Part shown: positions 4,700 to 62,700 of the stretch, piece by piece
Layout of the letters: each line of letters starts with the position of its first letter
Position numbering within the stretch: the stretch's first letter is position 1
Assembly (NCBI RefSeq): GCF_009834535.1
Contig: NC_045713.1
Coordinates: forward strand, 14,074,001-14,138,000
Origin: Camelus ferus
Taxonomy: Eukaryota
Reading direction: 5' to 3'
DNA length: 64,000 bases
The notes under the pieces: model-generated
The model's database searches: none
What the model was told of the DNA's origin: nothing
The model's input: only the letters and a program-made list of their open reading frames with translations
Translations under genes and position numbers: made by a program

Positions 4700-5160
4700 C
4701 ACTTTCACAACCGCCGGGGGAGGGGCGGGGTTTGCCACTGGACCGTCGTCGGAGAGGGCGGGCCTTGAGCTCGCGGCTCGGGATTGGGTAGCGCGGGCGG
4801 AAGGAGGCGATCTTCTAGCCGGAAGAGGAGGGATTCTCCGGCGGCGGCAAATAGCGAAGAGTTGCAACAGTCTTCATGCTGCCCGCGGACTGCTCGCGCC
4901 GGTGAGGCCCGCGCCGCAGGAGGGAGCGGGGGCGGGGCGGGAGGGCGCGCGGCCCGAGGCCCGTCGGGTGCTGAGCTGCGGGTGCGTCCCTCCCAGGCTG
5001 GTGGCCGAGCTGCGGGATGCCCTGGATTCCTGCGCCCAGCGACAGCGGCAGCTGGAACGGAGCCTGCGAGTCTCCCGGCGACTCCTTAGAGCCTGGTATG
5101 CGGACCCCGAAACCACACGACTAGGCCTCTCTAGGACCGTCAGAACCCAAATTAGAGCCC
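4700..5160. promoter_or_regulatory. TEDC2 CpG-island promoter with GC boxes, reverse CCAAT (ATTGG near 4783), ETS (CGGAAG) and an E2F-like site (GCGGCAAA 4844-4851)
   Basis: CpG-dense sequence around the ATG at 4876. Motifs read directly from the sequence. Island boundaries are approximate. Confidence 0.7.
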
Positions 5161-8100
5161 CTGGGCCGGGAGGCCGAGCCCAACGCTCACTTCCGAGTTG
5201 CCGGTTGTCAGTGTTCACCCGGCTTTCCCCTGCAGGCCCGGGGACTGCTCCTAGACTAGGCGTCGTGGTTGGGGGGTGGTGTTGGGCCTGGGCCCTGCCT
5301 CCTGACCGTGCCACCACGGCTGCCCTGTGTCTTCACAGGGAACCAGCCGAGACCCCAGTTCCGGAGCCAACCCCAGGGCCAGAAACTGATGAAAAGGTTC
5401 CGTCTTCAGGTAAACCTCAGCCACCCACCTTCTGCAGGTGCCACCCCTGGTCTGTCTTTTGGAGTGCAGTGGTGAGGGACCCTTTGCGGGAAACAGTGGT
5501 GAGGGACCGCTACATGACTTTTAGCTTTCACAGCATGCTCACCCAGTCCCCAAGACCTCAAAGAGCTGGAGCTTCTGACCCAGGTGCTGGAGAAGGCTGT
5601 ACGGGTGCGAAAAGGCATCTCAAAAGCTGGAGGAGACAAGGACCCCAGTGTGAAGTCTGAGTCCCTTGCCGCTTCCCCTGCCACCAGAGCCTCCACCCGA
5701 CTCCGGGCCTCAGGCTGGACTGGCAGCCATGCATCAGAAACAAAACACCCCAGGGGCATCCGTCAAACCAGGGTGCCTGCCAAGGACCTCTCTGAGCGCA
5801 GGCTTGTCTCAGTGGAGGATCCAACCTGCATGGGGCGAGGGGCCCGAGCTGCCAAGGTGGAACCAAGACACAGGAGCCAACAAATAGTCCCACTGGCTGC
5901 TCCTCAGGCCCGAGAAGTTTTTACACTCAAGGATAAGGGGTAGGTCTCCCATACCCTCACTGGGGGAATCGCTGTCTCTACCTGATCAGATCCTGGGCAG
6001 CAGTAAGAGTCTGGGTTTGGGGTGATGGGGGGGGAAGGGCATTGAGCTGGAGGTGGGCCAGGAGAACCCCACGATGCCACCCCATGAGGCCCATGACCTG
6101 AAACTGGCAGAATGGAACGGTAGGCTGTGGAGGTGCCACGTGGGATGTGCTGGAGCCTGTCCTGCTCTCCTCTGTGGCTGCCCAGTGCCCTGTCCTCTTA
6201 TCCACCCAGCCCGGGGGTTGCACATGGGCTCTAGAAGGCCTGGGCTCTGCTTTCTCTTCCCTCTGCCAGGCCAGACCTGGAGTGGACTGGCTCCCGTGGT
6301 CACTCTGGAAGCCCTGTCTGAGGGGGTGGGTGAGCCTCAAACCTGATGGGGCTGAGTGGGGCCTGCAATCCCCAGAATGAGGCAAGGCTGCTCTGAGCAC
6401 CGGCTTCCCCGACAGGATCCTGCTGCAGCTGCCCATGGCCTTCAGGAAAGCAGCTTCCCAGAACTCCCGGTGAGGCTGAGCTTGGGGCTAGGTGGGAGTG
6501 GAGGGGAGACCAGGGGAGTGTGGAAAGCAGGGAGGCTGAGGCTTGTAAGACTTTTCAAGCAGGTTCTTCTGCTTTATTTGCTAGGTGGCGACACTATCTT
6601 AAGAGAGTCAGCCTACTTAGGACTGCTATAGTCATCTTAGACTCAGTGGGCCCAGCTCAGCCTCTCTCAACCTGTGGGACCTTGAGCAAGGCACTTAGTG
6701 TTTCTGAGTCCCAATTTGTCTTCCTTGTAGAGGTGACAGTAGTAGTACGAGCTTTATAGAGGTGTTGTAAGGGTTAAATGAGGTGGTGCCTGCAAGTGTT
6801 TGTGTTGTGCCAGGTTCAGAGCCAGCACCCATAGCCCTTATCATACATCCTGGTTACAGTCACTGCTGGCCTCTCTCCCCTTCCTTGAATTCTGTCCTAG
6901 TACTTCCCAGAATGGGGCAGCTCTGTCCCCTTTTCATGGATGGTGTCTCCTTGGTTCCCTGGGGCCCCTACCCTGGCCCTTGCCTACTTCTCATGGCCCA
7001 GCCCAGCTGGTTCAAATAACCACAATGCTCTTTGGTTCCCTCACTGCCATGTGTGCATCCCAGCCTGTGGGCCCAGCTCAGCTCTACACATACCAGTGAT
7101 TCTGGGGATGCTGCTACCACTGCTAAAAACCATTTCCTCCAGAAAATGCAGACAACCGTATCCTTGCTGGGCTTGCAGGAGCCTGCGATGAGAGTGGGTG
7201 GAGGGTTGGGAGGGAGCAGAGGTTCTGGCTCTAAACCTGGTGAGTTTGAGGAGCAACTCTAGGACCTGATCCTTGGGGGAAAGGGCTGGGAGGGGCCTGG
7301 CCACGGGGGAATTTCCCTGACCAATGTCCAGTCAGGCTGGCCCAGCTCTAGGCTCAGTCCCGCAGAGGTGGAGGCGGAGGTAGGGCGCCTGCGGAAGGCC
7401 TGCTCGCTTCTAAGACTTCGAATGGGGAAGGAACTCACTGCAGGTTAGTGGACCCTGATTTGGGTTTCTGGTGGAAGTGAGGAGGGCTGGGCTCAGGGAG
7501 AGCTTCAGGACCAGCACGGACCTGGCCTGCCCTCCCTGACTCATGTAGACCCCAAGGACTGGATGCAGGAGTACCGCTGCCTGCTTACCCTGGAGGGGCT
7601 GCAGGCCCTGGTGGGGCAGTGTCTCCACAGGCTGCAGGAGCTGCGTACAGGTGAGACTCCATCCCCACCTCCACCTGTGCTGAAATCTGGTGGGGGGGTC
7701 AGAGTCCTCTAGCCACAAGGAAGTGTTGGGACTTTAACAGCAGCCCAGGAGCAGAGGCAGGCAGGCCCTTCCCCATGTCACCCCACTGCATCCTAAGTTC
7801 TCACTGGTTGTCCTGTGGAGCTGGCCAAGACAGCTCCCCCGCTCCATTCCCTCTCCCAACACACTAAGAACTTGCTTATTTAGCCAGTTAGGCTTGTGAG
7901 ACTTAGGTGCTAGCAGATACCTGGTATTGCACAATAGTTATTTATGGACAATAGGGCTTCATCCAGGAGGCAAAGGGAAACTTTGCATCCCATAAAAGGT
8001 GAGTGGGGAGGAGGCGCCTAGCCACTGCCCCATGAGGCCTTAGCCCTCTGTCCTTACAGCAGTGGTGGAACAGCAGCTGGGGCCATGGCCTGAGGGGAGA

Positions 8101-8712
8101 CTCCCTAGGGCCTCATCACCCTGTGGAGGAGGAGCAGACACTATCCGGAGCCCCCCATTGCTTCTCTACTCCAGTACCCAGGAGCTGCAGACCCTGGCAG
8201 CCCTTAGGCTGCGGGTGGCCATGCTGAACCAGCAGATTCACCTGGAAAAGGTACTTCCAGCGTGGGGAGTAGGTGACTTTGTTAGGGGTGCCCTGGTGAG
8301 GACTCCAGGTCTGCAGCCTCGTGAGGACTTGGCCTCGAGAGTCTATCTGTGCTTCTCCCCTCAAGACCCACCAGGGAAGGATGGGAGCCTCTGAGCCCGT
8401 GCACGTGCTGAGGGTGCTGGTGCTCTGGGAGGAGGGAAGGGCTGGAGCCTGGTGTGTCGAAGCCTGCTTTAGAATTGCCCCACTCCTCAGGCCTGCCTGT
8501 GGGGGCCCTGAGCTAGTTGAGACAGGGCCCTCCTGAGACCTTGGCCCTGTACCACCCTGCAGGTCCTGATGGCTGAACTCCTCCCCCTGGTGAGGGAACA
8601 GGAGCCCCTGGGGCCGCCCTGGCTGGCACTGTGCCGGGCTGTGCACAGCCTGCTCTGCGAGGGGGGTGAGCGCTTCCTCACCATCCTCCGAGAAGATGAG
8701 CCTGCCGACTGA
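4876..8712 (+). CDS. TEDC2: Tubulin epsilon and delta complex protein 2 (C16orf59), 434 aa: join(4876..4901,4997..5095,5339..5409,5534..5939,6416..6469,7064..7157,7332..7443,7549..7650,8060..8250,8563..8712)
   Basis: The spliced translation MLPADCSRRLVAELRDALDSCAQRQRQLERSL...ACSPSPQDLKELELLTQVLEKAVRVRKG...DWMQEYRCLLTLEGLQ...SSTQELQTLAALRLRV...VLMAELLPLV...LCRAVHSLLCEGG matches recalled human TEDC2. Exons total 1305 nt (435 codons), all GT-AG. The position between CCNF and NTN3 is as in human. Confidence 0.95.
6640..6810 (+). mobile_element. MIR SINE fragment (TEDC2 intron 5)
   Basis: GACCTTGAGCAAGGCACTTAG...TTGTAAGGGTTAAATGAG. Boundaries approximate. Confidence 0.65.
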
Positions 8713-9770: not shown

Positions 9771-10689
9771 TCACAGCTCTGGGCCTTGATGGGGGCTGGG
9801 AGGCACTGGTGTCACTAACATGAATCTTTACTGAGCACCCGTGTGGGCCAAGCACAACCCGCAGAGCTGGCGCACTAGCTCTTTGTGTGAACATTGATGT
9901 GCAAGACCAAGTAACACCCGCTTCCTCCCTGAGAGACTCAGGCCCTGGAGGCAGCTCATTCCCGAGAAGGCCCAGTCTTATGAGAGCCTGATGAAGTGTT
10001 CGAGATATGGGGGGATGAACTGGGTGATGCTGAAGTAGCCTTGGGGTGGCCCCATCCTGCAGGAGGCCCTGCTTGTAAAAGTCAGCAGGCCAGAAACCTT
10101 GGACATGGAGTCCTAGGTCTTTTGGGCTGCTGGGGACCAGATGACAGACCAAAGTAGGAAACAAAAAACCAGGGCATTCATTGCACTGAGGGGCTTCTGG
10201 GGAGTGGAACTCCAGGGTAGGGGAAGCAAGAGAGGGAGGTTACCTGGTGGACAAGCACCTCTTTCTGGCCACTCCATTGCTGCCTCCAGAGCTTATGCTC
10301 AGCTGCGGGGATCTGGAGGAACCCTTGATCTCCAGGGCAAATCCCACCACCACCGTGTTACTAGCCACCCCAGAATCAGTTTCCACAGCAGGTGGTCTCC
10401 ATGACAGTCATTTCCTCCACTAATTCACTTGGTTTATTTTGCATCTTCCCTATTGGGCAGGGATGCTGTCCACCTCCATCCCTAGCTAGGCCCAGCTGGG
10501 TGCCCAGAAATTGTTGACTCAATGACCCACCCATCTGAGGCCAGTCCTGGGCACTGGTGGTGTCCTGCGGTCTGCTGTGAGCACCTGGGCCTTCAAGGGC
10601 AGGGAGGTGCTGCGGATAGCACGAGGGGAGAGGTCTGAGGAGGCCTCAGCACAGGGCACCCAGGGCAGGAAAGGGAGACCCTCACCTCT

Positions 10690-11560
10690 GAATTAGCGCC
10701 CGCCCACGCGATGCCAGGAGACAGCGGCGAACTCCTCCCACTGGCGTCACCGCATACCTTCCAATCCACTCTGACGTGGCGGGCAAGCTGGGGCTGCAGG
10801 GGCGCCCACACCCACCCCGAGCGCAGCCCCAGCGTCGGAGGCATGAGCTCGCACGAGCCCCCACCCGCGGCCCCTGCCGAGCCCCCGCGGGTCCTACGCG
10901 CGCTGCTCTTGGCCACCGGCGGCGCGGGGGGCTCGTGGCCGCGTTGCGTCCTGCCGTTCGGCGCCGTGGCTCTCCTTGCTGGCGCCTCCGCCACGGCCAT
11001 CACCTTCTCGCTGCGCGGACCCCGCCTGGACCTGGCCCAGAGCGCGTCGCTTGCCGCACTCGGCGCGGGCCTCGGGCTCCTGGCCGCCGCCTTCCTATGC
11101 TGGCGCGCTCGGCGGCGGCGGAGGGCCATGCGCGGGGGGCGGCGGGAGCCGGGGACGCCCTGAGCCCGCGCGCCAATCCCTCTGCCCTGCGAGGTCACGG
11201 CGAGCCGGCGCCTCCTCCCTTCGGACCTCGTCCAAGCCGGCTGGCGCAGTGCGGCTCGCGGGTCCTGGAAACCTCCCCAGACCCTGTCCCCAAACTGTAT
11301 CGTTCTGAACCGTTAGGAGGCCTGACCTTTAAGGGGGCTACAAGTCATTTTCCTCCCCTCCCCAGACTCGGCTCTCCCCTTCTCGCGCCCCTCCTCCACA
11401 CAGTGTTGCTTTTCGGCGTTTCGCTTGGCGCGCAGAGCGGGGCTGGCGGCAGTATGCGCGGCACAGGGGCCCTGCCGGGTGTGCAGGGTGCGGGGCGGCA
11501 GCTGGCCGAGGACTTGACTTGGCCACCTTCCTCGGGACGAGGCGCCCTTCCCGAGCTGTG
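10690..11560. promoter_or_regulatory. CpG island covering the TMEM100-like ORF
   Basis: Abrupt rise in CG dinucleotide density relative to the CpG-poor flanks (9200-10650 and 11600-14000). Boundaries approximate. Confidence 0.7.
10843..11163 (+). CDS. TMEM100/PIRT-family two-transmembrane protein (TMEM100-like), 106 aa; an in-frame upstream ATG at 10711 would give 150 aa
   Basis: The ORF segment LATGGAGGSWPRCVLPFGAVALLAGASATAITFSL...LAALGAGLGLLAAAFLCWRARRRRR aligns by hand with recalled TMEM100 (AATGGTELSCYRCIIPFAVVVFIAGIVVTAVAYSF...LVVLSSGLFLLASSALCWKVRQR). It has two hydrophobic helices and a basic tail, no stops or frameshifts, and lies in its own CpG island. Confidence 0.78.
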   Translation: MSSHEPPPAAPAEPPRVLRALLLATGGAGGSWPRCVLPFGAVALLAGASATAITFSLRGPRLDLAQSASLAALGAGLGLLAAAFLCWRARRRRRAMRGGRREPGTP

Positions 11561-13839
11561 TCTTCCCCGCTGGGGTGGAAGCCTCTCGAGGCATAATAGG
11601 CACTCAATAAATGTTTGTGCTTTATGTGAACAAGTGGTGGCTTGCGTCTGATGAACAGTGGGATCCTGGGCTAGGCCTGGAGTATTTGATCAGTTGGTCT
11701 TTTAAGGGAAAGACCCCAGCCCCCTGAGGTTTGAGACTGTCAGGGTCCCTCGTTTCGTTTTCTCCCAGATAGGTTCCCTGAGCCCCAAAGCCAGCAACTA
11801 TCACTCCAAATGGGGGCGAGGATGGGGGTAGGGGGACTGCCACCTGAAGAGTTGCAGGTGGGGACCTGGAGGTGGAGCCTCTCCTAAGGTGCCAAGAGTG
11901 GGCAGGGCCTGCAGAGAACTGTGAGGTGTGAGAGGCTCTATTTAGGGGCCGGAGCCAGATGGCTGAGTCCACAAGAAGAAATGATCCTGGGTTGGGTGCT
12001 GTGGGGAAGGCCCCCTCATAACTCCTATCACACCATCTGCCAGGGCTGCACCAGGGACCAGAAGAGAATGCATACCCTAGGGCCGTTCCAGGGAAGAGGC
12101 TGGGCTGCCTGCAGCCTCCTCCCTGGGGAGCTAGTAGTGCCAGCTGGCCCTGATCAACACTGCAGGCTAAGCCCTGGGGACCTTATACCCACACTAGAAG
12201 CCACCAGATGTTTTGCAGACCCTAACCCCAACTCATGAGGAGGCTGGGCCATACACAAAACCTGCAGTGCTGGGCAGGGAGAGCTGCTCCCTGCTTTCCT
12301 CCTTCCTGGAAGGACTCCTGAAGTCCAGATAGCCACAGTTTTGCTGGAGGTTTGTCTCAGGCCCTGGGGAACCACTGTGTTGGGCCTGTGCATTTCTCCC
12401 CACTGTGGCCACCTCCTTGCTTCTAACAATCCCAGAAGGATTTATCACATCCCTCACTCTCCCACTAGGGCTCCTCCCATCCCAGCGAGTTTTGAGGCTG
12501 ATGATCAGAAAAACCTTGAAGAGGATGGTTGGAAAAGTGTTGTTTCTGAACCTCACCCATCCCAGAGCAGAACTGTGTGCCCTGTCAGCTCCCTCACTCA
12601 TGCATGGCTGTTTGTTACAAGGGGCTTAATCTCTTCATCGAGAAGTTGAGGGACAGGTCCCTGTGGCACCTGCTTTCTGGGGCATGGGGCACCCTTGGCC
12701 TTCCTGTTGTTGTTAGAGGTGAAGGGAGAGGCTAGCAGCCCCTCTGGCCCTCCTGTCTCAGTCCTTCTAAAGTCTCCTGTCATCCCATCAGTCCCTTCAC
12801 CCCACCCACCCTACCCGCCCTGCTGAATGTGTGCTATTCAGGCCTGGGAAAGGGCCTTGACCAGAGGGTGACTGTCTTCCCCCACCATCCAGTCTTCCCG
12901 CTGCTCTTTTTCTAAAGTCAAGCCCTCCTGCATCCTCCTCTTCTTCAGTATACCCTGGGAGGTTTCAGTGCCCTCCTGTCCCTCCTCTCCTAAACAGCAC
13001 AAGGATTCTTCTCTCCATCCTCTTCTTGTCCATCCCTGCACTATCTCTGACCCAGCCCCCGCCTACACAGACACCCATGTGGTGTCCTCCACTTGCTGCT
13101 GGGCTGGGCCTGGCCTGGGGTCAGCCTCCCATCTGAAACTTCAGGCCTCAGAGCTGCTCCCAGGTAGGATGTATTCCTGTATTCCCTGCCCCCACTGCAT
13201 GGGGCTGACCCTTCCTGAAATACTTGGCTCCCTCCATCAAGGACCTAAACGTCATGGGGAAGGGGTCTTTCTGTCCAGAGCAACTTCTGGCCCCTCTTGC
13301 CTGGGGCCATTCTTAGTTGCAGCTGCCTCACCCCCAGATGGTGCTCAGGCTACCCAGCTGGACTGTTTCCCTGCCCAAACCTGCTAGTATGTGGCTGGGA
13401 CTCAGGAGTTCTAGCACTGAACTGTCTGTGACTCGGCCCTCCCCATGGATCAAACCCGACTCCCTACCTGTCACAGGAGGTCCTCAACAGCTGACCAAGG
13501 CCCTGAACCCCAAAAGGCCCTGTCACCTAGTGGGCTATACCTGCCCCCCACCCCAACATACACACACACATACATGCACAGCTCCAGCTTCCTCCCTGCC
13601 AGCTTTAATGCCTATCATGGTGATGCAAGTAGACACTCAGAGACCCAGGGGTGGTTTGGGACAAGAGTTTGGCCTGATCCCGGTGGGGAATGCCAGCTTC
13701 ATCACTTAGGTGAGCTCAGGCCAGTCCTGGGGTGCAGTCCTTCCTGAACATGAGGCAGGAGGGACCCAAGTGAGCTCCCTGGCTACATCCGATACCTATG
13801 TAGCTAATGATATCCCAACAGCTTGGCAAAGTTGAATTA

Positions 13840-14299: not shown

Positions 14300-15100
14300 C
14301 TGGCCCAGCCAGTGTCTGAATCTGCTTCTGATTCCGGCTCTGCCGACGAGGCCCCCTCCCCTCCCCTCCCTTCCCCTCCCTCCTTCACGGCCCGAGCAGC
14401 CCCGCCCCCGGCTGGGCCCAGGCGTGCGCCTGCTGCGCCCCCCACCCCCTTCTGGCACAGCTCGCCCGCCCTCGCTGCAGCCGGGAGGAGGCGGCGGCTG
14501 GGGCGCCCCAGGCCCCGCCTGCCCTTGGCCCTTCCCGGGAGGCTGGGAGACCTGCTCTACCCGGCCCTCGGTGGGTGAGTGCGAGCGGCGGGTGGCGGGT
14601 GGGGCCTCTGCAGGCGGAGGCACCGAGAGCGGGGGCGACGCCTGTCATTGCTCCAGGCCCAGCGGGAGGACTCACCGACATCCCCGCTGCTCCGCTCGGC
14701 CAGGGCGTGCCCGCAGCTGCTCCCACCTCTGGGCCCCGGCTAGGGCCGCCTGGGGGCTCTGGTTGCTCGGCATTGAGGACCAGCAGGCAGAGCCTCGGAG
14801 CGGGCTCTCTCTCCCGAGGGCAGTGGCGTGGGACCCCGGCTGGCTGGCTGACCCACGGCGGCTCCGGCCATGCCCGGCTGGCCCTGGGGGCTGCTGCTGA
14901 CCGCGGGCACACTTTTGGCCGCCCTGAGCCCGGGGCCACCGGCGCCCGCCGACCCCTGCCATGACGAGGGGGGCGCGCCCCGCGGCTGTGTGCCCGGCCT
15001 GGTGAACGCGGCCTTGGGCCGCGAGGTGCAGGCGTCCAGCACGTGCGGGCGGCCGGCCACACGGGCCTGCGACGCCTCCGATCCGCGGCGGGCACACCCT
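14300..15100. promoter_or_regulatory. NTN3 CpG-island promoter/5' region
   Basis: CpG-rich with multiple GC boxes and C-tracts upstream of ATG 14870. Boundaries approximate. Confidence 0.65.
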
Positions 15101-17362
15101 GCCAGCCTCCTAACCTCCGCAGGGGGCACCACAAGCCCTCTATGCTGGCGTTCGGACTCGCTAACGCAGGTGCCCCTCAACGTGACCCTCACAGTGCCCC
15201 TGGGCAAGGCTTTTGAGCTGGTGTTCGTGAGCTTGCGCTTCTGCTCGCCACCCCCAACATCCGTGGCCCTGCTCAAGTCTCAGGACCATGGCCGAAGCTG
15301 GGCTCCACTGGGCTTCTTCTCCTCCTGCTGTGGCCTGGATTACAGCCGACTGCCTGCCCCTGCTGATGGCCCAGCTGGCCCAGGGCCTGAAGCCCTGTGC
15401 TTCCCTGAGCCCCAGGCCCAGCCTGACGGTGGTGGCCTTCTGGCCTTCAGCGTGCAGGATGGCAGCCCGCCAGGCCTGGATCTGGACAGCAGCCCAGTGC
15501 TCCAAGACTGGGTGACCGCTACAGACATTCAAATAGTGCTCACAAGGCCTACCATGCTGGGGGACACCAGAGACTCCACAGCCATGGTCCCTTACTCCTA
15601 CTCTGCCACTGAGCTCCAGGTGGGCGGGCGCTGTAAGTGCAATGGGCATGCCTCCAGGTGCCTGCTGGACCCCCAGGGCCATCTGATCTGCGACTGCCGG
15701 CATGGCACCGAGGGCCCGGACTGCAGCCGCTGCAAGCCCTTCTACTGCGACAGGCCATGGCAGCGGGCCACTGCCCGGGAAGCCCACGCCTGCCTTGGTG
15801 AGGCCCTGGAGGGTCGCCTGGGGATCTTAGACCAGGCGAGCCTATCCCTGACCCATCCTTCCCTGCAGCTTGCTCCTGCAACGGCCATGCCCGCCGCTGC
15901 CGCTTCAACATGGAGCTGTACCGACTGTCTGGCCGCCGCAGTGGCGGTGTCTGCCTCAACTGCCGGCACAATACTGCTGGCCGGCACTGCCACTACTGCC
16001 GGGAGGGCTTCTATAGAGACCTGGGCCGTGCCCTGAGTGACCGCCGAGCTTGCAGGGGTGAGCCACCTGCCACCTATACACCCTCACCCTCTGGTTTCCC
16101 ACATCCCTAGATGGGCTTCTGACCATCCCACTTCTGTCCTTAGCCTGTGACTGTCACCCTGTTGGTGCTGCTGGCAAAACCTGCAACCAGACCACAGGCC
16201 AGTGTCCCTGCAAGGATGGCGTCACTGGCCTCACCTGCAACCGCTGTGCCCCTGGCTTCCAGCAGAGCCGCTCTCCAGTAGCACCCTGCGTTAGTGAGTG
16301 ACGCCGCCCTGCTTAGACCACCTCAGCCGAGGTCACCCCAGCTTTCTCTGCTGCCTACCTCTTCCCTGAGCCCTGCACATCCCCCTGCCCCCCTCAACTG
16401 TCTCCTGAGCCCTGCAGAGTCCCCTGCCCCCCTCAAACGCAGGCCATTATCCCATCCTCTCCAGAGACCCCTGTCCCTGGACCCACTGAGGAGAGCAGCC
16501 CTGTGGAGCCCCAGGGTGAGTGGAGGTCCCAGACCACCATGTCCATAGGGGGAGGGGGTAATGGGTTCAAGGAAGGGAAGAGGAAAGGATGGGGGAAGGA
16601 GGTGGGGATCTGTGCCAACCTCCTCCTGCGCCCTCCTCCCAGACTGCGACTTGCACTGCAAACCCGCCCGTGGCAGCTACCGCATCAGCCTGAAGAAGTT
16701 CTGCAGGAAGGACTACGGTAGGCTGCCCTGAGGCCTCCTGCCCTCGACCTCCTCACCTTGCCCTCACTTTCCCTCTGGATACCCTGACCCTAGCTGGACC
16801 CCAAGGCCATACCACACCCCTCTGGTCCTCCGCTGTCCCTGTCCCCGCCCTGTCAGCCCCCCGTGGCCTTCGTGTGCTCGCGATGCTACGTGTCCCCTGT
16901 GGGTTCCTCCTCCGCGCCCCTCCCACGCGCCGCCGCCGGGTGCTCCTCTGCGCGGCCCGCCCCCTCCGGGCCCCGCCCCGCCTGAACCTGCCTCCTCTCG
17001 CCCCCCTTGCAGCGGTGCAGGTGGCAGTGGGCGCGCGGGGCGAGGCGCGCGGCTCCTGGACGCGCTTCCCGGTGGCCGTGCTTGCCGTGTTCCGGAGCGG
17101 CGAGGAGCGCGCGCGGCGCGGGAGCAGCGCGCTGTGGGTGCCGGCGCGGGACGCAGCCTGCGGCTGCCCGCGCTTGCTGCCCGGCCGCCGCTACCTGCTG
17201 CTGGGGGGCGGGCCCGGGGCCGCGGTCGGGGTCCCCGGGGGCCGGGGCCCCGGGCTCAGCGCCGCCCGCGGGAGCCTCGTGCTGCCCTGGCGGGATGCGT
17301 GGACGAGGCGCCTTCGGAGGCTGCAGCGGCGCGAGCGGCGGGGGCGCTGCGGGGCGGCCTGA
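14870..17362 (+). CDS. NTN3: Netrin-3, 580 aa: join(14870..15797,15869..16057,16144..16293,16465..16515,16643..16717,17013..17362)
   Basis: Signal peptide [20 protein letters not shown], laminin N-terminal domain, three laminin-EGF repeats ([33 protein letters not shown]) and a C-terminal NTR/C345C domain ([20 protein letters not shown]...CGCPRL). Exons total 1743 nt (581 codons), all GT-AG. Confidence 0.97.
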
Positions 17363-33733: not shown

Positions 33734-39592
<5,859 letters not shown>

Positions 39593-59700: not shown

Positions 59701-62700
59701 CCCCTCAGCTGCTGGCCCCCAGGCCTCTTTCTGCTGCGTCTCTCTGTCCAGTATCCCGGGCCTTCCTCTTTGTGGATTTACACCTTAATTTTGGTGGAGC
59801 CCATCCTCCAGCAACTTCCAGAGAAAGGAGTCACAGGGGGTAACACTTTTGAAATGTTGGAGGTCTGAGATAACTTGACTCTCTTAATCGATGTCTCGTC
59901 TGGGTTAGCACTGTGGATTAGAAGTCACTGCTCTCTAGAATTTTGATGGCATTTGCGTATTGTCTTTTAACTTCCAGGGTTGCTGATGAGAAATCAGAAG
60001 CCATCCGACTCCTGATCCTTTGTGCATGACCTGTTTTTTCCATCTGGAAGCCTTTGGGGTCTTCCCTCTGTCCCTAGGGTGACGTGTGGGGACTGGTGGG
60101 AGTTCATCTGCTGTGCTGGGGAGGGTAGAGCTCAGCGGTAGAGCCCATGCTTAGCGTGCACGAGGTCCTGGGTTCACTCCCCAGTGCCTCCATCAAAAGA
60201 AAGAAAATGAAATGCACACTCATGAGTCCCTGCACCCACAGATCCTCCATCAGCGGGTCTGGGATGGGGCTCGGTAATCTACATGTAAAACAAAAGTAGA
60301 AATTGCCCTCACCTGGAGACCCTCTGCTTTAGCCCTCTAGGTGCATGGTGTGACAGAGCTGGGGACCATTCTACTTTTTTTTTGTTATTTACTNNNNNNN
60401 NNNNNNNNNNNNNNNNNNNNNNNNNNNNNNNNNNNNNNNNNNNNNNNNNNNNNNNNNNNNNNNNNNNNNNNNNNNNNNNNNNNNNNNNNNNNNNNNNNNN
60501 NNNNNNNNNNNNNNNNNNNNNNNNNNNNNNNNNNNNNNNNNNNNNNNNNNNNNNNNNNNNNNNNNNNNNNNNNNNNNNATCTCTCTTTTGTTTTTCAATG
60601 GAGGTACTGGGGATTGAACCCAGGACTTTATACATGCTGAGTCCGTGCTCTGCCCCTGAACTGTGCCACCCCGGGACCTGGCTACTCTTTAGTGAGGCTC
60701 CTCTTGTCAATCCCCCTGCTTCTTGAGGCGCCAAGCACTGCCAAAGCCTAAGCCAGTTGGGGTGTGGTGTGGTGCCTGCTTCCTTTCTGTCCCCCCGGTG
60801 TGTCTTTGTCCAGCAGCTGCTTTTTGGGCTCCTGAGTCAGCCTGCCCTTGTCCTGTCTTCATGCTGAGTTTAAGCCTCTGAAAAATCCCCGTTCCTCTCT
60901 TTGGGGTGGAGGGTACACCAGTCCACCAGGCTCTCCCCGGAAACTCTGCAGGGGACATCCTGTAGGGCTCCCCATCCCACATCCTTCCCCACGTTGAAGG
61001 AGAGGGCTTTGGGCTGGGATACCTGCCTGCCTGTCCTCTGATATATGTGATGTGAGCACCTGTCATGCACAAGTGACGTTCCCCACTGTGTCCAGATCCG
61101 GGCTCAGAGTGGCCACGCCGTTTGTGCCTGAGCTCCCCAGCTACCAAGCCCGTGCCTCTGCCCTTTGCTCTGCCTGGAATGCATGTCCTCCTCCCACCTC
61201 AGCCCTGCTTCCCAGACCTGTAGCTCAGGAAGGCCTGGCCTGTCACCCAGTCAGGCCCCATGCTTCCTGGCCCCACTGTGTCCTAACTGCTGTCTGATGG
61301 GGCCACCTTGAGGGCCTTGGTGCCCCATGCCTGCCCATGGCCTGGGAGCTATCACCTCGTCTCCGGGTCCTCTTGAGCAGACCAGTCTTGCATCCTTGGG
61401 GTCCTGTCATTTCTTGATGCTCCTGTGACCCTGTGTCCCACTGCTTCTGAATGCTGTGCTTTCCCTGACCATGGTTGAGGGCCTTCGACCCTTCTAACAC
61501 CTGAGGGAAGGCCAGTGGGGACTGGGCTGGGCTCTGACCTCTGGGTGCTGGGCCGCGGGGGGCAGGGCTTTAACAGCTGGTTCCCCCCAGGTCCTTCCTC
61601 AGATACCCGTGAAGAGTGGTGGTCCCCATGGGGCAGGGGTCCTCGGTGAGTGGCTGACCCCTCTCCCCGCCCCTATCCTGGGAGGCTCCTTGGGGACCTA
61701 TTGGCAGCCCCTCACCTTCCAGATGCCCAACTGTGGGGGGAGGACGGGCAGGCAAGAGGGTCAGTGAGGGGGCAGCAGGGCGGCTGGGGACCTGCTGGAA
61801 ACCTCCCCTCCCCTCCCCCCAGGGGTGCACCTGGAGGGCCCATTCATCAGCCGGGAGAAGCGAGGCGCACACCCTGAGGCCCACCTGCGCTCCTTTGAGG
61901 CCAGTGCTTTCCAAGACTTGCTGGCCACCTATGGGTCCCTTGACAACGTCCGCATTGTGACGCTGGCCCCCGAGCTGGACCGCAGCCACGAGGTGATCCA
62001 GGCGCTGACAGCCCTTGGAATATGCGTGTCCCTCGGTGAGGATTGTGTCCTGACCTCTGTCCCGGGGCCCCAGGCTGGGTGCTGAGTCTGAGCCTGGGTC
62101 CCTGCACAGGACACTCAGTGGCTGACCTGGGGGCTGCAGAGGAAGCCGTGCGGAGTGGGGCCACCTTCATCACCCATCTCTTCAACGCCATGCTGCCCGT
62201 GAGTGGCGCCCCAGCTCTGGGCGGGAGGGTGTGGCCGTCCTGCTGTGGCTCAGTGCCCCCCTCCTGCCCCTGCCCAGTTCCACCACCGTGACCCTGGCAT
62301 CGTGGGGCTCCTAACCAGTGACCAGCTGCCCCCAGGCCGCCACATCTTTTATGGGATGATTGCCGACGGCATGCACACCAACCCCGCCGCCCTGCGCATC
62401 GCCTACCGGGCCCATCCCCAGGGTGAGCAGCTGGCTGGGGCGGGAGCAGGTAGGAAGACCAGCCCAGCTGGGTCCTGAGCCCCCTTCCTCCTATAGGGCT
62501 GGTGCTGGTCACTGACGCCGTCCCTGCTCTGGGCTTGGGCAATGGCCGACACACACTGGGGCAGCAGGAGGTAGAGGTGGATGGGCTGACAGCCTATGTG
62601 GCAGGTGAGTAGCCCCAGTCCCCAAGACTGCCCGAGTGAGAATAGCCCCTCGGCCCCTCTGCTGGGGAGTAAGAACCCACCCCTGGCCCCCAAAACCTAC

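What the first reader, a model, noticed from the sequence alone, without database searches (positions are those of the whole stretch)
10843..11163. Intact, apparently unnamed third member of the TMEM100/PIRT family between TEDC2 and NTN3
Seen: a single-exon, stop-free 106-codon ORF (G at -3 of the ATG; optional in-frame extension from 10711) inside its own CpG island. It encodes two hydrophobic helices, a short loop and a polybasic tail (LCWRARRRRR...GGRR). Established: TMEM100 and PIRT are two-TM regulators of TRP channels (TRPA1/TRPV1, TRPV1/TRPM8) in sensory neurons with basic cytosolic C-termini, and TMEM100 also acts in BMP9/ALK1 endothelial signalling. By hand alignment to recalled TMEM100, the signature ATGG-x3-S-x2-RC-x2-PF-x2-V-x3-AG-x3-TA-x3-S...GL-x-LLA-x3-LCW is kept at identical spacing except for one loop indel (roughly 27-28 identities over about 70 residues). 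Inference: the 16p13.3-syntenic block is paralogous to human 17q (SOX8/SOX9, CACNA1H/CACNA1G, AXIN1/AXIN2), where TMEM100 sits, and PIRT lies on 17p with NTN1, the NTN3 paralogue. This gene may therefore be a whole-genome-duplication ohnologue retained here and lost or unannotated in human, and a possible new TRP-channel accessory subunit next to the sensory-neuron gene NTN3.
Basis: partly seen in the sequence, partly recalled or inferred. Interest (0 to 1): 0.87.

Follow-up and report, generated by a model that had tools for sequence, protein, structure and literature searches.

The report
Unstudied TMEM100 paralogue gene beside netrin-3
The 106-codon reading frame is a real, selectively constrained gene for a small two-helix membrane protein: an ancient sister of the pain and blood-vessel regulator TMEM100 that genome pipelines already label "TMEM100-like" but that nobody appears to have studied.

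Summary
It lies between TEDC2 exons (4995-8709) and a netrin gene (14870-17359).

It hits Pfam TMEM100 (PF16311) at E 2e-18, 66.7 bits against a cut-off of 34, and keeps every family-invariant residue.

Orthologues sit at the same TEDC2-netrin position in goat, fox, woodchuck and kangaroo rat. An opossum and chicken have the gene just downstream of TEDC2. Deeper relatives occur in gecko, elephant shark, bichir and teleosts.

A tree splits this clade from TMEM100 proper with 100/98 support, so it is a paralogue, not TMEM100.

Among 10 mammals the 74-codon core has no indel. dN/dS is 0.26 in frame against 1.3-2.6 in the shifted frames. The ATG at 10843 is conserved; the ATG at 10711 is not.

The gene is not unknown to databases. 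RefSeq calls it "transmembrane protein 100-like" in bears, walrus, kangaroo rat and opossum, and "TMEM100" in chicken. I found no paper treating it as a distinct gene.

The link to PIRT is weak. Transcription, human status and any TRP-channel role could not be tested here.

Verdict: a new, uncharacterised member of a known family, of moderate interest.

The parts
10843..11163 (+). Single-exon coding sequence of the TMEM100-like paralogue (106 codons plus TGA)
   Evidence: ORF. Pfam PF16311 E 2.1e-18, 66.7 bits. Orthologues 63-93% identical in mammals. dN/dS 0.36 over the whole ORF and 0.26 over the core, against 1.0-2.6 in shifted frames.
10600..11500 (.). CpG island enclosing the gene
   Evidence: GC 0.72 and CpG o/e 0.86 over 10600-11500. 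GC 0.75 and CpG o/e 0.95 over 10700-11300. Flanks 0.18 and 0.09.
10912..10923 (+). ATGG motif (residues 24-27), start of the family signature ATGG-x3-S-x2-RC-x2-PFG
   Evidence: G26 and G27 are invariant and A24 and T25 nearly invariant in 29 family members.
10945..11013 (+). First hydrophobic helix (residues 35-57, CVLPFGAVALLAGASATAITFSL)
   Evidence: Translation. Kyte-Doolittle 19-residue means up to 1.92. The AlphaFold2 model has a helix at 27-57.
11014..11040 (+). Short loop (RGPRLDLAQ), clade-specific motif GP(R/Q)(L/M)D
   Evidence: Conserved from mammals to chicken and gecko, one residue longer than in TMEM100. The model has a non-helical stretch at 58-63.
11041..11103 (+). Second hydrophobic helix ending in the nearly invariant CW (residues 67-87)
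   Evidence: Translation. Hydropathy up to 2.04. The model has a helix at 64-98. C86 and W87 are nearly invariant.
11104..11145 (+). Polybasic juxtamembrane tail (RARRRRRAMRGGRR). Its RRE aligns with the KRRE of TMEM100.
   Evidence: BLASTP alignment. The KRR triplet of TMEM100 is reported to govern TRPA1-TRPV1 regulation (PMC7081373, citing Weng et al. 2015).
10711..10842 (+). In-frame upstream extension, probably untranslated leader and not coding
   Evidence: 7 of the 9 other mammals have no in-frame upstream ATG, and the two that do have it at other positions; the frame stays open only because of the GC content.
11606..11611 (+). AATAAA, the only canonical poly(A) signal between the stop codon and the netrin gene. 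It is a candidate 3' end.
   Evidence: It lies in a block shared by placentals that looks like an old MIR-type SINE (from memory). It is changed or deleted in 3 of 7 species aligned, so the evidence is weak.
4995..8709 (+). Upstream neighbour: TEDC2 (C16orf59/DUF4693) exons
   Evidence: tblastn with the Elephantulus C16orf59 homologue. The same neighbour carries PF15764 in goat, fox, woodchuck, kangaroo rat and opossum.
14870..17359 (+). Downstream neighbour: netrin gene (Laminin_N, laminin EGF, NTR), consistent with NTN3
   Evidence: Pfam hits. The same neighbour is present in the other mammals.

Best explanation
window:10843-11163(+) is a functional single-exon gene for a 106-residue membrane protein. 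It is an ancient paralogue of TMEM100, conserved across jawed vertebrates and kept just downstream of TEDC2 in mammals and chicken (the netrin gene was seen on its other side only in placental mammals).

Shown:
- It belongs to the TMEM100 family.
- It forms a clade separate from TMEM100 proper.
- Its position is conserved.
- It is under frame-specific purifying selection.
- Its start codon is conserved.

Inferred:
- The protein inserts as a helical hairpin, with a short outer or luminal loop and both ends in the cytosol.
- The invariant cysteines at the cytosolic ends of the helices (C35, C86) and the arginine-rich helix continuing from TM2 lie at the inner leaflet.
- There the tail binds acidic lipids and/or the cytosolic parts of a partner membrane protein.
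- By analogy with TMEM100, it would act as a small adaptor that tunes ion-channel complexes (TRP-type) or receptor complexes, not as an enzyme or a channel itself.
- Non-mammalian orthologues start with MGC, a myristoylation/palmitoylation-type motif, and end in ..EQGxL. Therian mammals have lost both, so the mammalian protein probably relies on the hairpin and the basic tail alone.
For: Family: Pfam PF16311 at E 2.1e-18, 66.7 bits against a cut-off of 34. All invariant and nearly invariant family residues are present.

Orthologues: 33 hits at E<=1e-3, among them goat, reindeer, fox, bear, walrus, woodchuck, kangaroo rat and a marsupial. Deeper relatives include chicken, gecko, elephant shark, bichir and teleosts.

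Synteny: CCNF-TEDC2-gene-netrin in goat, woodchuck, fox and kangaroo rat, and TEDC2-gene-netrin in two unidentified rodent-like mammals. TEDC2-gene in opossum and chicken.

Tree: a 100/98 split separates this clade from TMEM100, TMEM100b and a shark/turtle clade.

Selection: dN/dS median is 0.36 over 99 codons and 0.26 over the 74-codon core, which has no indel in 10 mammals. Shifted frames give 1.0-2.6.

Start codon: the ATG is conserved, with a purine at -3, in all 10 mammals.

Structure: hydropathy and the AlphaFold2 model show two long helices with a six-residue break.

Tail and ends: RRE of the tail aligns with KRRE of TMEM100. The KRR triplet is functionally important in TMEM100 (PMC7081373). 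MGC starts and EQGxL ends are found in non-mammals.
Against: No transcript or protein evidence was obtained. The public short contigs that carry the ORF are colinear with the genome and could be genomic reads.

The AlphaFold2 model has only moderate confidence (mean pLDDT 65, pTM 0.34).

The mammalian stem branch is long, and the helices are unusually Ala/Gly-rich.

The distal tail is not constrained. Woodchuck, kangaroo rat and one more mammal carry frameshifted tails after the arginine run, which removes the RRE.

Degenerate copies exist in some mammals: P0061, P0033 and the Elephantulus fusion model P0036.

The partner and function are inferred only from about 32% identity to TMEM100.
Confidence: 0.8

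Rival explanations
1. Gene in decline. The ORF is intact here, but the mammalian copy is losing its function (relaxed constraint, no longer translated or only weakly), as a relic of a gene that is fully functional in birds and fishes.
For: The mammalian stem branch is long and the ancestral MGC start and EQGxL end are lost. Tails are frameshifted in three Glires lineages. Degenerate copies are P0061, P0033 and the Elephantulus model with WPSC and no CW-basic tail. Some pairwise dN/dS values reach 0.5-0.96.
Against: The 74-codon core has no indel from marsupial to placentals. Its dN/dS median is 0.26, down to 0.09. All invariant residues are kept in the window, and start codon and context are conserved in 10 of 10 mammals.
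Confidence: 0.1
2. Chance ORF in a GC-rich CpG island that is conserved for regulatory reasons (netrin promoter or enhancer, or TEDC2 3' region), not a gene.
For: At 75-80% GC, longer ORFs occur in another + frame (291 aa) and on the - strand (201 aa) over the same DNA. No transcript evidence.
Against: The profile hit is far above the Pfam threshold. Homologues exist in GC-poorer fish and bird genomes. Constraint is specific to this frame.
Confidence: 0.02
3. Terminal coding exon of a TEDC2 read-through transcript and not an independent gene, as in the 701-residue Elephantulus 'C16orf59 homolog' model that fuses the two.
For: P0036 joins TEDC2 and the TMEM100-like domain in one predicted protein. 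Both lie on the same strand, about 2 kb apart in the window.
Against: The gene has its own CpG island and a conserved ATG with a good context. The bichir and croaker relatives have no other called gene within 10 kb on either side. All other annotated models are separate genes. The Elephantulus domain looks degenerate.
Confidence: 0.03

Closest known systems
TMEM100 (Pfam PF16311), two-transmembrane adaptor of the TRPA1-TRPV1 complex and BMP9/10-ALK1 target gene
   Same: Same Pfam family. Same size class, with the coding sequence in one exon. Same signature ATGG-x3-S-x2-RC-x2-PFG ... G ... CW. Two helices with a short loop. Basic juxtamembrane tail whose RRE aligns with the KRRE of TMEM100.
   Different: Only 32% identical (28/87). 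It falls in a separate clade with 100/98 support. It has SW instead of SC before RC, a one-residue-longer loop with GPxxD, a Pro/Ala-rich N-terminus and no ...ESQTALVxNQRSLFA end. Its genomic neighbourhood differs (TEDC2-netrin). Function is untested.
Predicted 'transmembrane protein 100-like' of RefSeq (for example Ursus XP_026340861.1, Odobenus XP_004403341.1, Dipodomys, Gracilinanus) and chicken 'TMEM100' XP_001232349.1
   Same: These are the orthologues of the window gene. Where DNA context was fetched (kangaroo rat, opossum, chicken) they lie just downstream of TEDC2. Identity is 49-93% and they fall in the same clade.
   Different: They are automatic predictions without curated symbol, literature or experiment. 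Non-mammalian ones keep an MGC start and an EQGxL end that the window protein lacks.
PIRT (Pfam PF15099), phosphoinositide-interacting regulator of TRP channels
   Same: A small two-helix membrane protein with a basic cytosolic C-terminus. PIRT clusters are the next-nearest by language-model features (0.89). Five of 29 TMEM100-family members give weak PIRT hits.
   Different: The window protein gives no PIRT hit at E<=10.

Membership tests
TMEM100 family (PF16311) | Profile match above the curated gathering score | tested here: met
   E 2.1e-18, 66.7 bits against a cut-off of 34, residues 21-97 on profile positions 42-117.
TMEM100 family (PF16311) | Invariant signature residues (ATGG, S, RC, PFG, G in helix 1, L/G in helix 2, CW) | tested here: met
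   G26, G27, C35 and G47 are invariant. A24, T25, S31, R34, P38, F39, G40, L73, G76, C86 and W87 are nearly invariant across 29 members. All are present in the window protein.
TMEM100 family (PF16311) | Two hydrophobic helices joined by a short loop | tested here: met
   Hydropathy peaks at 35-57 and 67-87. The AlphaFold2 model has helices 27-57 and 64-98, at pLDDT 65. Topology itself was not tested.
TMEM100 family (PF16311) | Basic C-terminal tail with the KRR triplet that governs TRPA1-TRPV1 regulation | tested here: inconclusive
   The tail is polybasic, and RRE aligns with KRRE of a rodent TMEM100. The distal tail is frameshifted in three mammalian lineages. The role of KRR is taken from PMC7081373.
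TMEM100 proper (orthologue of mammalian TMEM100) | Falls inside the TMEM100 clade in a family tree | tested here: not met
   A 100/98 starred branch separates the window clade (33 rows) from TMEM100, TMEM100b and the shark/turtle clade. Identity to TMEM100 is 32% against 49% to the chicken orthologue.
TMEM100 proper | Physical and functional interaction with TRPA1/TRPV1; induction by BMP9/10-ALK1 | not testable with these tools
   This needs co-immunoprecipitation, electrophysiology and expression data.
PIRT family (PF15099) | Profile match to PF15099 | tested here: not met
   No PIRT hit for the window protein at E<=10. Five of 29 relatives give sub-threshold hits, best E 6.2e-4. Feature similarity to PIRT clusters is 0.89, which is a lead only.
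2R ohnologue pair with TMEM100 | Duplication older than crown jawed vertebrates, and location in paralogous chromosome blocks | tested here: inconclusive
The window clade contains elephant shark, bichir, teleosts and tetrapods, so the split is at least that old.

The most novel reading that the evidence does not exclude
This is an uncharacterised ohnologue of TMEM100, retained from sharks to mammals. It appears intact in a commonly sequenced rodent with B1-type SINEs, where it seems to lack any NCBI or UniProt protein record. It would act as an accessory subunit of sensory TRP channels or of BMP/ALK1 receptor complexes. It could therefore compensate for, or oppose, TMEM100 in knock-out and pain studies that have so far assumed TMEM100 has no paralogue. 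Therian mammals have rewired it by dropping the ancestral N-terminal lipid anchor.
Probability: 0.2. Interest if true: 0.7.

Novelty: new member of a known kind. Interest (0 to 1): 0.45.

Why it matters
TMEM100 is studied as a lever on persistent pain (the TRPA1-TRPV1 complex; peptides derived from the 3Q mutant) and in ALK1-dependent vessel formation, always as a gene without a sister.

A conserved paralogue with the same hairpin and basic tail could share partners. That would give redundancy or antagonism in Tmem100 knock-outs, and a second target.

The finding also exposes a naming trap. The bird and many fish genes called 'TMEM100' are orthologues of this gene, not of mammalian TMEM100, so cross-species expression comparisons may mix two genes.

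The practical gain is modest until expression and partners are shown.

Tried and rejected
- Transcript evidence from public short-read assemblies. Contigs carrying the ORF in an unidentified mammal, in fox and in croaker are colinear with genomic DNA and have ragged ends, so they say nothing about transcription.
- Poly(A) signal. The AATAAA at 11606 lies in a block shared by placentals, but the block looks like an old MIR-type SINE and the signal is altered in 3 of 7 species.
- Human status. A metagenome-contig scan with a mammalian alignment returned one non-informative locus. A search with the degenerate copy P0061 found only itself. No conclusion is possible.
This was useful only to flag B1-like repeats in loci L020-L022. 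It gave nothing for the window.
- Fish synteny. No called neighbours lie within 10 kb in bichir or croaker.
- Nucleotide-level gap counting in the tails was not interpretable, because the arginine/glycine codon repeats have low complexity.
- Literature. There were no papers for 'TMEM100-like', TMEM100L, TMEM100 family or TMEM100+NTN3 that treat this gene. The only mention is chicken LOC770617 'TMEM100-like' in a hen oviduct RNA-seq table, whose identity with the chicken orthologue I could not verify. Weng et al. 2015 (PMC4336228) is not held.
- Solved structures. None exists for the family by sequence.
- Earlier notes of this scan: nothing.
- A fold search was not run, because a two-helix hairpin at pLDDT 65 would match indiscriminately.

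Full report
**1. What is in the sequence**

window:10843-11163 on the + strand is an uninterrupted ORF of 106 codons plus TGA. It lies in a sharp CpG island: GC 0.75 and CpG observed/expected 0.95 over 10700-11300, against 0.18 and 0.09 in the flanks.

ORF length is not evidence here. At this GC content a 291-codon ORF in another + frame and a 201-codon ORF on the - strand cover the same DNA.

The product reads MSSHEPPPAAPAEPPRVLRALLLATGGAGGSWPRCVLPFGAVALLAGASATAITFSLRGPRLDLAQSASLAALGAGLGLLAAAFLCWRARRRRRAMRGGRREPGTP. It has two hydrophobic stretches (35-57 and 67-87), a short loop and an arginine-rich tail.

**2. Family**

The protein matches Pfam PF16311 (TMEM100) at E 2.1e-18, 66.7 bits against a gathering score of 34.

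In an alignment of 29 family members, every invariant residue (G26, G27, C35, G47) is present. So is every nearly invariant one (A24, T25, S31, R34, P38, F39, G40, L73, G76, C86, W87).

Against a rodent TMEM100 the match is 28 identities in 87 positions, E 3e-11, with a small loop indel.

**3. Neighbours**

- TEDC2 (C16orf59/DUF4693-type) exons lie at 4995-8709 on the + strand.
- A netrin gene with Laminin_N, laminin-EGF and NTR domains lies at 14870-17359 on the + strand.
- A RabGAP-TBC gene exon lies at 33734-34807 on the + strand.

This is the order expected for the block syntenic with human 16p13.3 (from memory).

**4. Orthologues and synteny**

A search of 5.8 billion proteins gave 33 hits at E<=1e-3, all carrying PF16311 but one. 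Among them are goat, reindeer, arctic fox, woodchuck, kangaroo rat and the marsupial Gracilinanus. Cluster members add bears and walrus.

| Species | Gene order seen |
|---|---|
| Goat, woodchuck, fox, kangaroo rat | CCNF - TEDC2 - this gene - netrin |
| Two unidentified rodent-like mammals | TEDC2 - this gene - netrin |
| Opossum (Gracilinanus), chicken | this gene just downstream of TEDC2 |

An exhaustive profile-free search found a second tier at 48-52% identity (chicken, turkey, gecko, elephant shark). A third tier at about 40% holds bichir and two teleost groups. TMEM100 proper comes after those.

**5. Paralogue, not TMEM100**

A maximum-likelihood tree of 48 sequences was built with LG+C20 on 126 columns. 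A 100/98 starred branch puts the window, all these mammals, chicken, gecko, elephant shark, bichir and both teleost groups on one side.

TMEM100, a TMEM100b-like group, a shark/turtle clade, lamprey and hagfish fall on the other side.

Mammals also have TMEM100 (for example P0073 from Scotinomys), so the two are paralogues. Their split is at least as old as crown jawed vertebrates.

The extra shark/turtle clade means 'third member' is not a settled count.

**6. Is it under selection?**

I took coding DNA from 8 and then 10 mammals and used Nei-Gojobori estimates.

| Region | dN/dS in frame (median) | dN/dS, same columns shifted by 1 or 2 bases |
|---|---|---|
| 99 ungapped codons | 0.36 | 1.05 and 2.05 |
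| 74-codon core (LRALLLATGG...CWRARR) | 0.26 (range 0.09-0.69) | 1.28 and 2.58 |

The core has exactly the same length in all 10 species, from opossum to placentals.

The ATG at 10843 is present in all 10 with a purine at -3. Seven of the 9 other species have no in-frame upstream ATG, and the two that do have it at other positions than the one at 10711. The 106-codon product is therefore the conserved one, and the 150-codon extension is unlikely.

**7. Signs of change in mammals**

Non-mammalian orthologues (chicken, gecko, bichir, both teleost groups) and a hagfish relative begin with MGC, or have it where the true start probably lies. MGC is a motif typical of N-myristoylated and palmitoylated proteins (my inference). 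Most of them, though not the hagfish protein, end in ..EQG(A/T)L or ..EQCPL.

Therian proteins start with MS.PEPP... and end in ..RREPG.P. The mammalian stem branch is long.

After the arginine run, woodchuck, kangaroo rat and one more mammal switch to the tail encoded by the neighbouring frame. The distal tail is therefore dispensable or unstable.

Three degenerate copies were seen:
- P0061, which has a frameshift in helix 1 and non-conservative changes;
- P0033, which has a changed C-terminus;
- the Elephantulus model P0036, which fuses TEDC2 to a TMEM100-like domain with WPSC and no CW-basic tail.

The gene may thus be lost in some lineages. The window copy shows no such damage.

**8. Structure and likely mechanism**

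An AlphaFold2 model with the 29-sequence alignment has moderate confidence (mean pLDDT 65, pTM 0.34). It shows a short helix at 15-24, a long helix at 27-57, a six-residue break and a long helix at 64-98 that runs on through the arginine tail. No solved structure exists for the family by sequence.

The positive-inside rule and the ancestral N-terminal acylation motif both place the two ends in the cytosol. This is inferred.

For TMEM100, the literature reports a two-transmembrane adaptor that loosens the TRPA1-TRPV1 association through a C-terminal KRR triplet (PMC7081373 and PMC10013686, citing Weng et al. 2015). The window's RRE aligns with that KRRE.

My best reading is a small hairpin adaptor. 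Its juxtamembrane cysteines and basic helix would sit on the inner leaflet and engage acidic lipids or a partner channel or receptor. A specific TRP-channel role is only an analogy; I put it at about 0.2-0.25.

**9. PIRT**

The window protein gives no PF15099 hit, even at E<=10. Five of 29 family members give sub-threshold PIRT hits, best E 6.2e-4.

By protein-language-model features, PIRT clusters are the nearest after the TMEM100 clusters (0.89 and 0.87). One 'PIRT-like' cluster has members with either domain. A distant relationship is plausible but not shown.

**10. Known or new?**

The gene has no curated symbol, and I found no paper that treats it. It is nevertheless in databases under automatic names:
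- 'transmembrane protein 100-like' in Ursus, Odobenus, Dipodomys and Gracilinanus;
- 'transmembrane protein 100' in chicken, fox and many fishes;
- 'hypothetical protein' in goat and woodchuck.

A rodent-like mammal with B1-type SINEs carries an intact 133-residue version. That version is seen in 217 blocks of the public collection, but only from JGI, Logan and ENA sources, which suggests it is unannotated in a commonly sequenced rodent.

Human status could not be settled. Transcription could not be tested. The only expression hint is chicken LOC770617 'TMEM100-like', listed as up-regulated in the magnum of laying hens (PMC8088581). Its identity with the chicken orthologue is unverified.

**11. 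Verdict**

This is a real, constrained, deeply conserved paralogue of TMEM100 at a conserved genomic position. It is predicted automatically in several genomes but is uncharacterised: a new member of a known kind. Interest is moderate. It would rise if expression in sensory neurons or endothelium, presence in mouse or human, or a shared partner with TMEM100 were shown.

Noticed in passing
L016:10001-10372 (chicken, CM028495.1) and protein P0114: The chicken protein that RefSeq names 'transmembrane protein 100' (XP_001232349.1) groups with the window gene and lies downstream of TEDC2-like exons. It is the orthologue of this paralogue, not of mammalian TMEM100. Many fish 'TMEM100' entries are in the same position. 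This is a naming trap for cross-species comparisons.
   Followed up: partly
proteins P0086 (Pelusios turtle), P0091 and P0092 (sharks), P0084 (lamprey): A further TMEM100-type clade (ATGG-x-E/G-x-x-C-H/A-RC-LL..., 99/94 support for the shark/turtle core) is distinct from both TMEM100 and the window clade. The family may therefore have had three or more ancient paralogues, with this one apparently absent from the mammals sampled.
   Followed up: partly
protein P0036 (Elephantulus edwardii XP_006893950.1, residues 491-575): A 701-residue 'C16orf59 homolog' model fuses TEDC2 to the TMEM100-like domain. The domain has WPSC for WPRC and lacks the CW-polybasic end. This points either to a read-through model error or to decay of the gene in elephant shrews.
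   Followed up: no
proteins P0061 and P0033 (unidentified mammals, Logan contigs): These are degenerate copies of the gene. P0061 has a frameshift across helix 1 and changes such as I to N and W to R. P0033 diverges after helix 2. They suggest lineage-specific loss.
   Followed up: partly
L004, L012, L017 (woodchuck, kangaroo rat, unidentified mammal), C-terminal codons: After the arginine run the reading frame shifts to the neighbouring frame. This gives long Ala/Gly/Pro tails (..GAAGAGDA..) that resemble the window's own +1-frame translation. The CGG-rich run seems prone to frameshifts that are tolerated.
   Followed up: partly
L020-L022 (JGI and Logan contigs), protein P0138: An intact 133-residue orthologue lies between TEDC2 and netrin in contigs with B1-like SINE motifs. 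It is present in 217 blocks of the public collection but has no NCBI or UniProt source. It is possibly an unannotated gene of a laboratory rodent.
   Followed up: partly
window:11560-11640: The block GCATAATAGGCACTCAATAAATGTTTG is shared by several placentals. It looks like the core of an old MIR-type SINE (from memory) and carries the only AATAAA between the gene and the netrin gene.
   Followed up: partly
window:33734-34807 (+): A large exon encodes a RabGAP-TBC domain (E 1.8e-28), consistent with TBC1D24 downstream of the netrin gene.
   Followed up: no
window:54980-55112 and 60394-60578: Two runs of N (133 and 185 bases).
   Followed up: no
alignment A1, Pfam scan of its members: Five of 29 TMEM100-family members also give weak hits to Neurensin/TMEM74 (PF14927, best E 1.9e-6) and five to PIRT. 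This hints at a wider superfamily of small two-helix neuronal membrane proteins.
   Followed up: no
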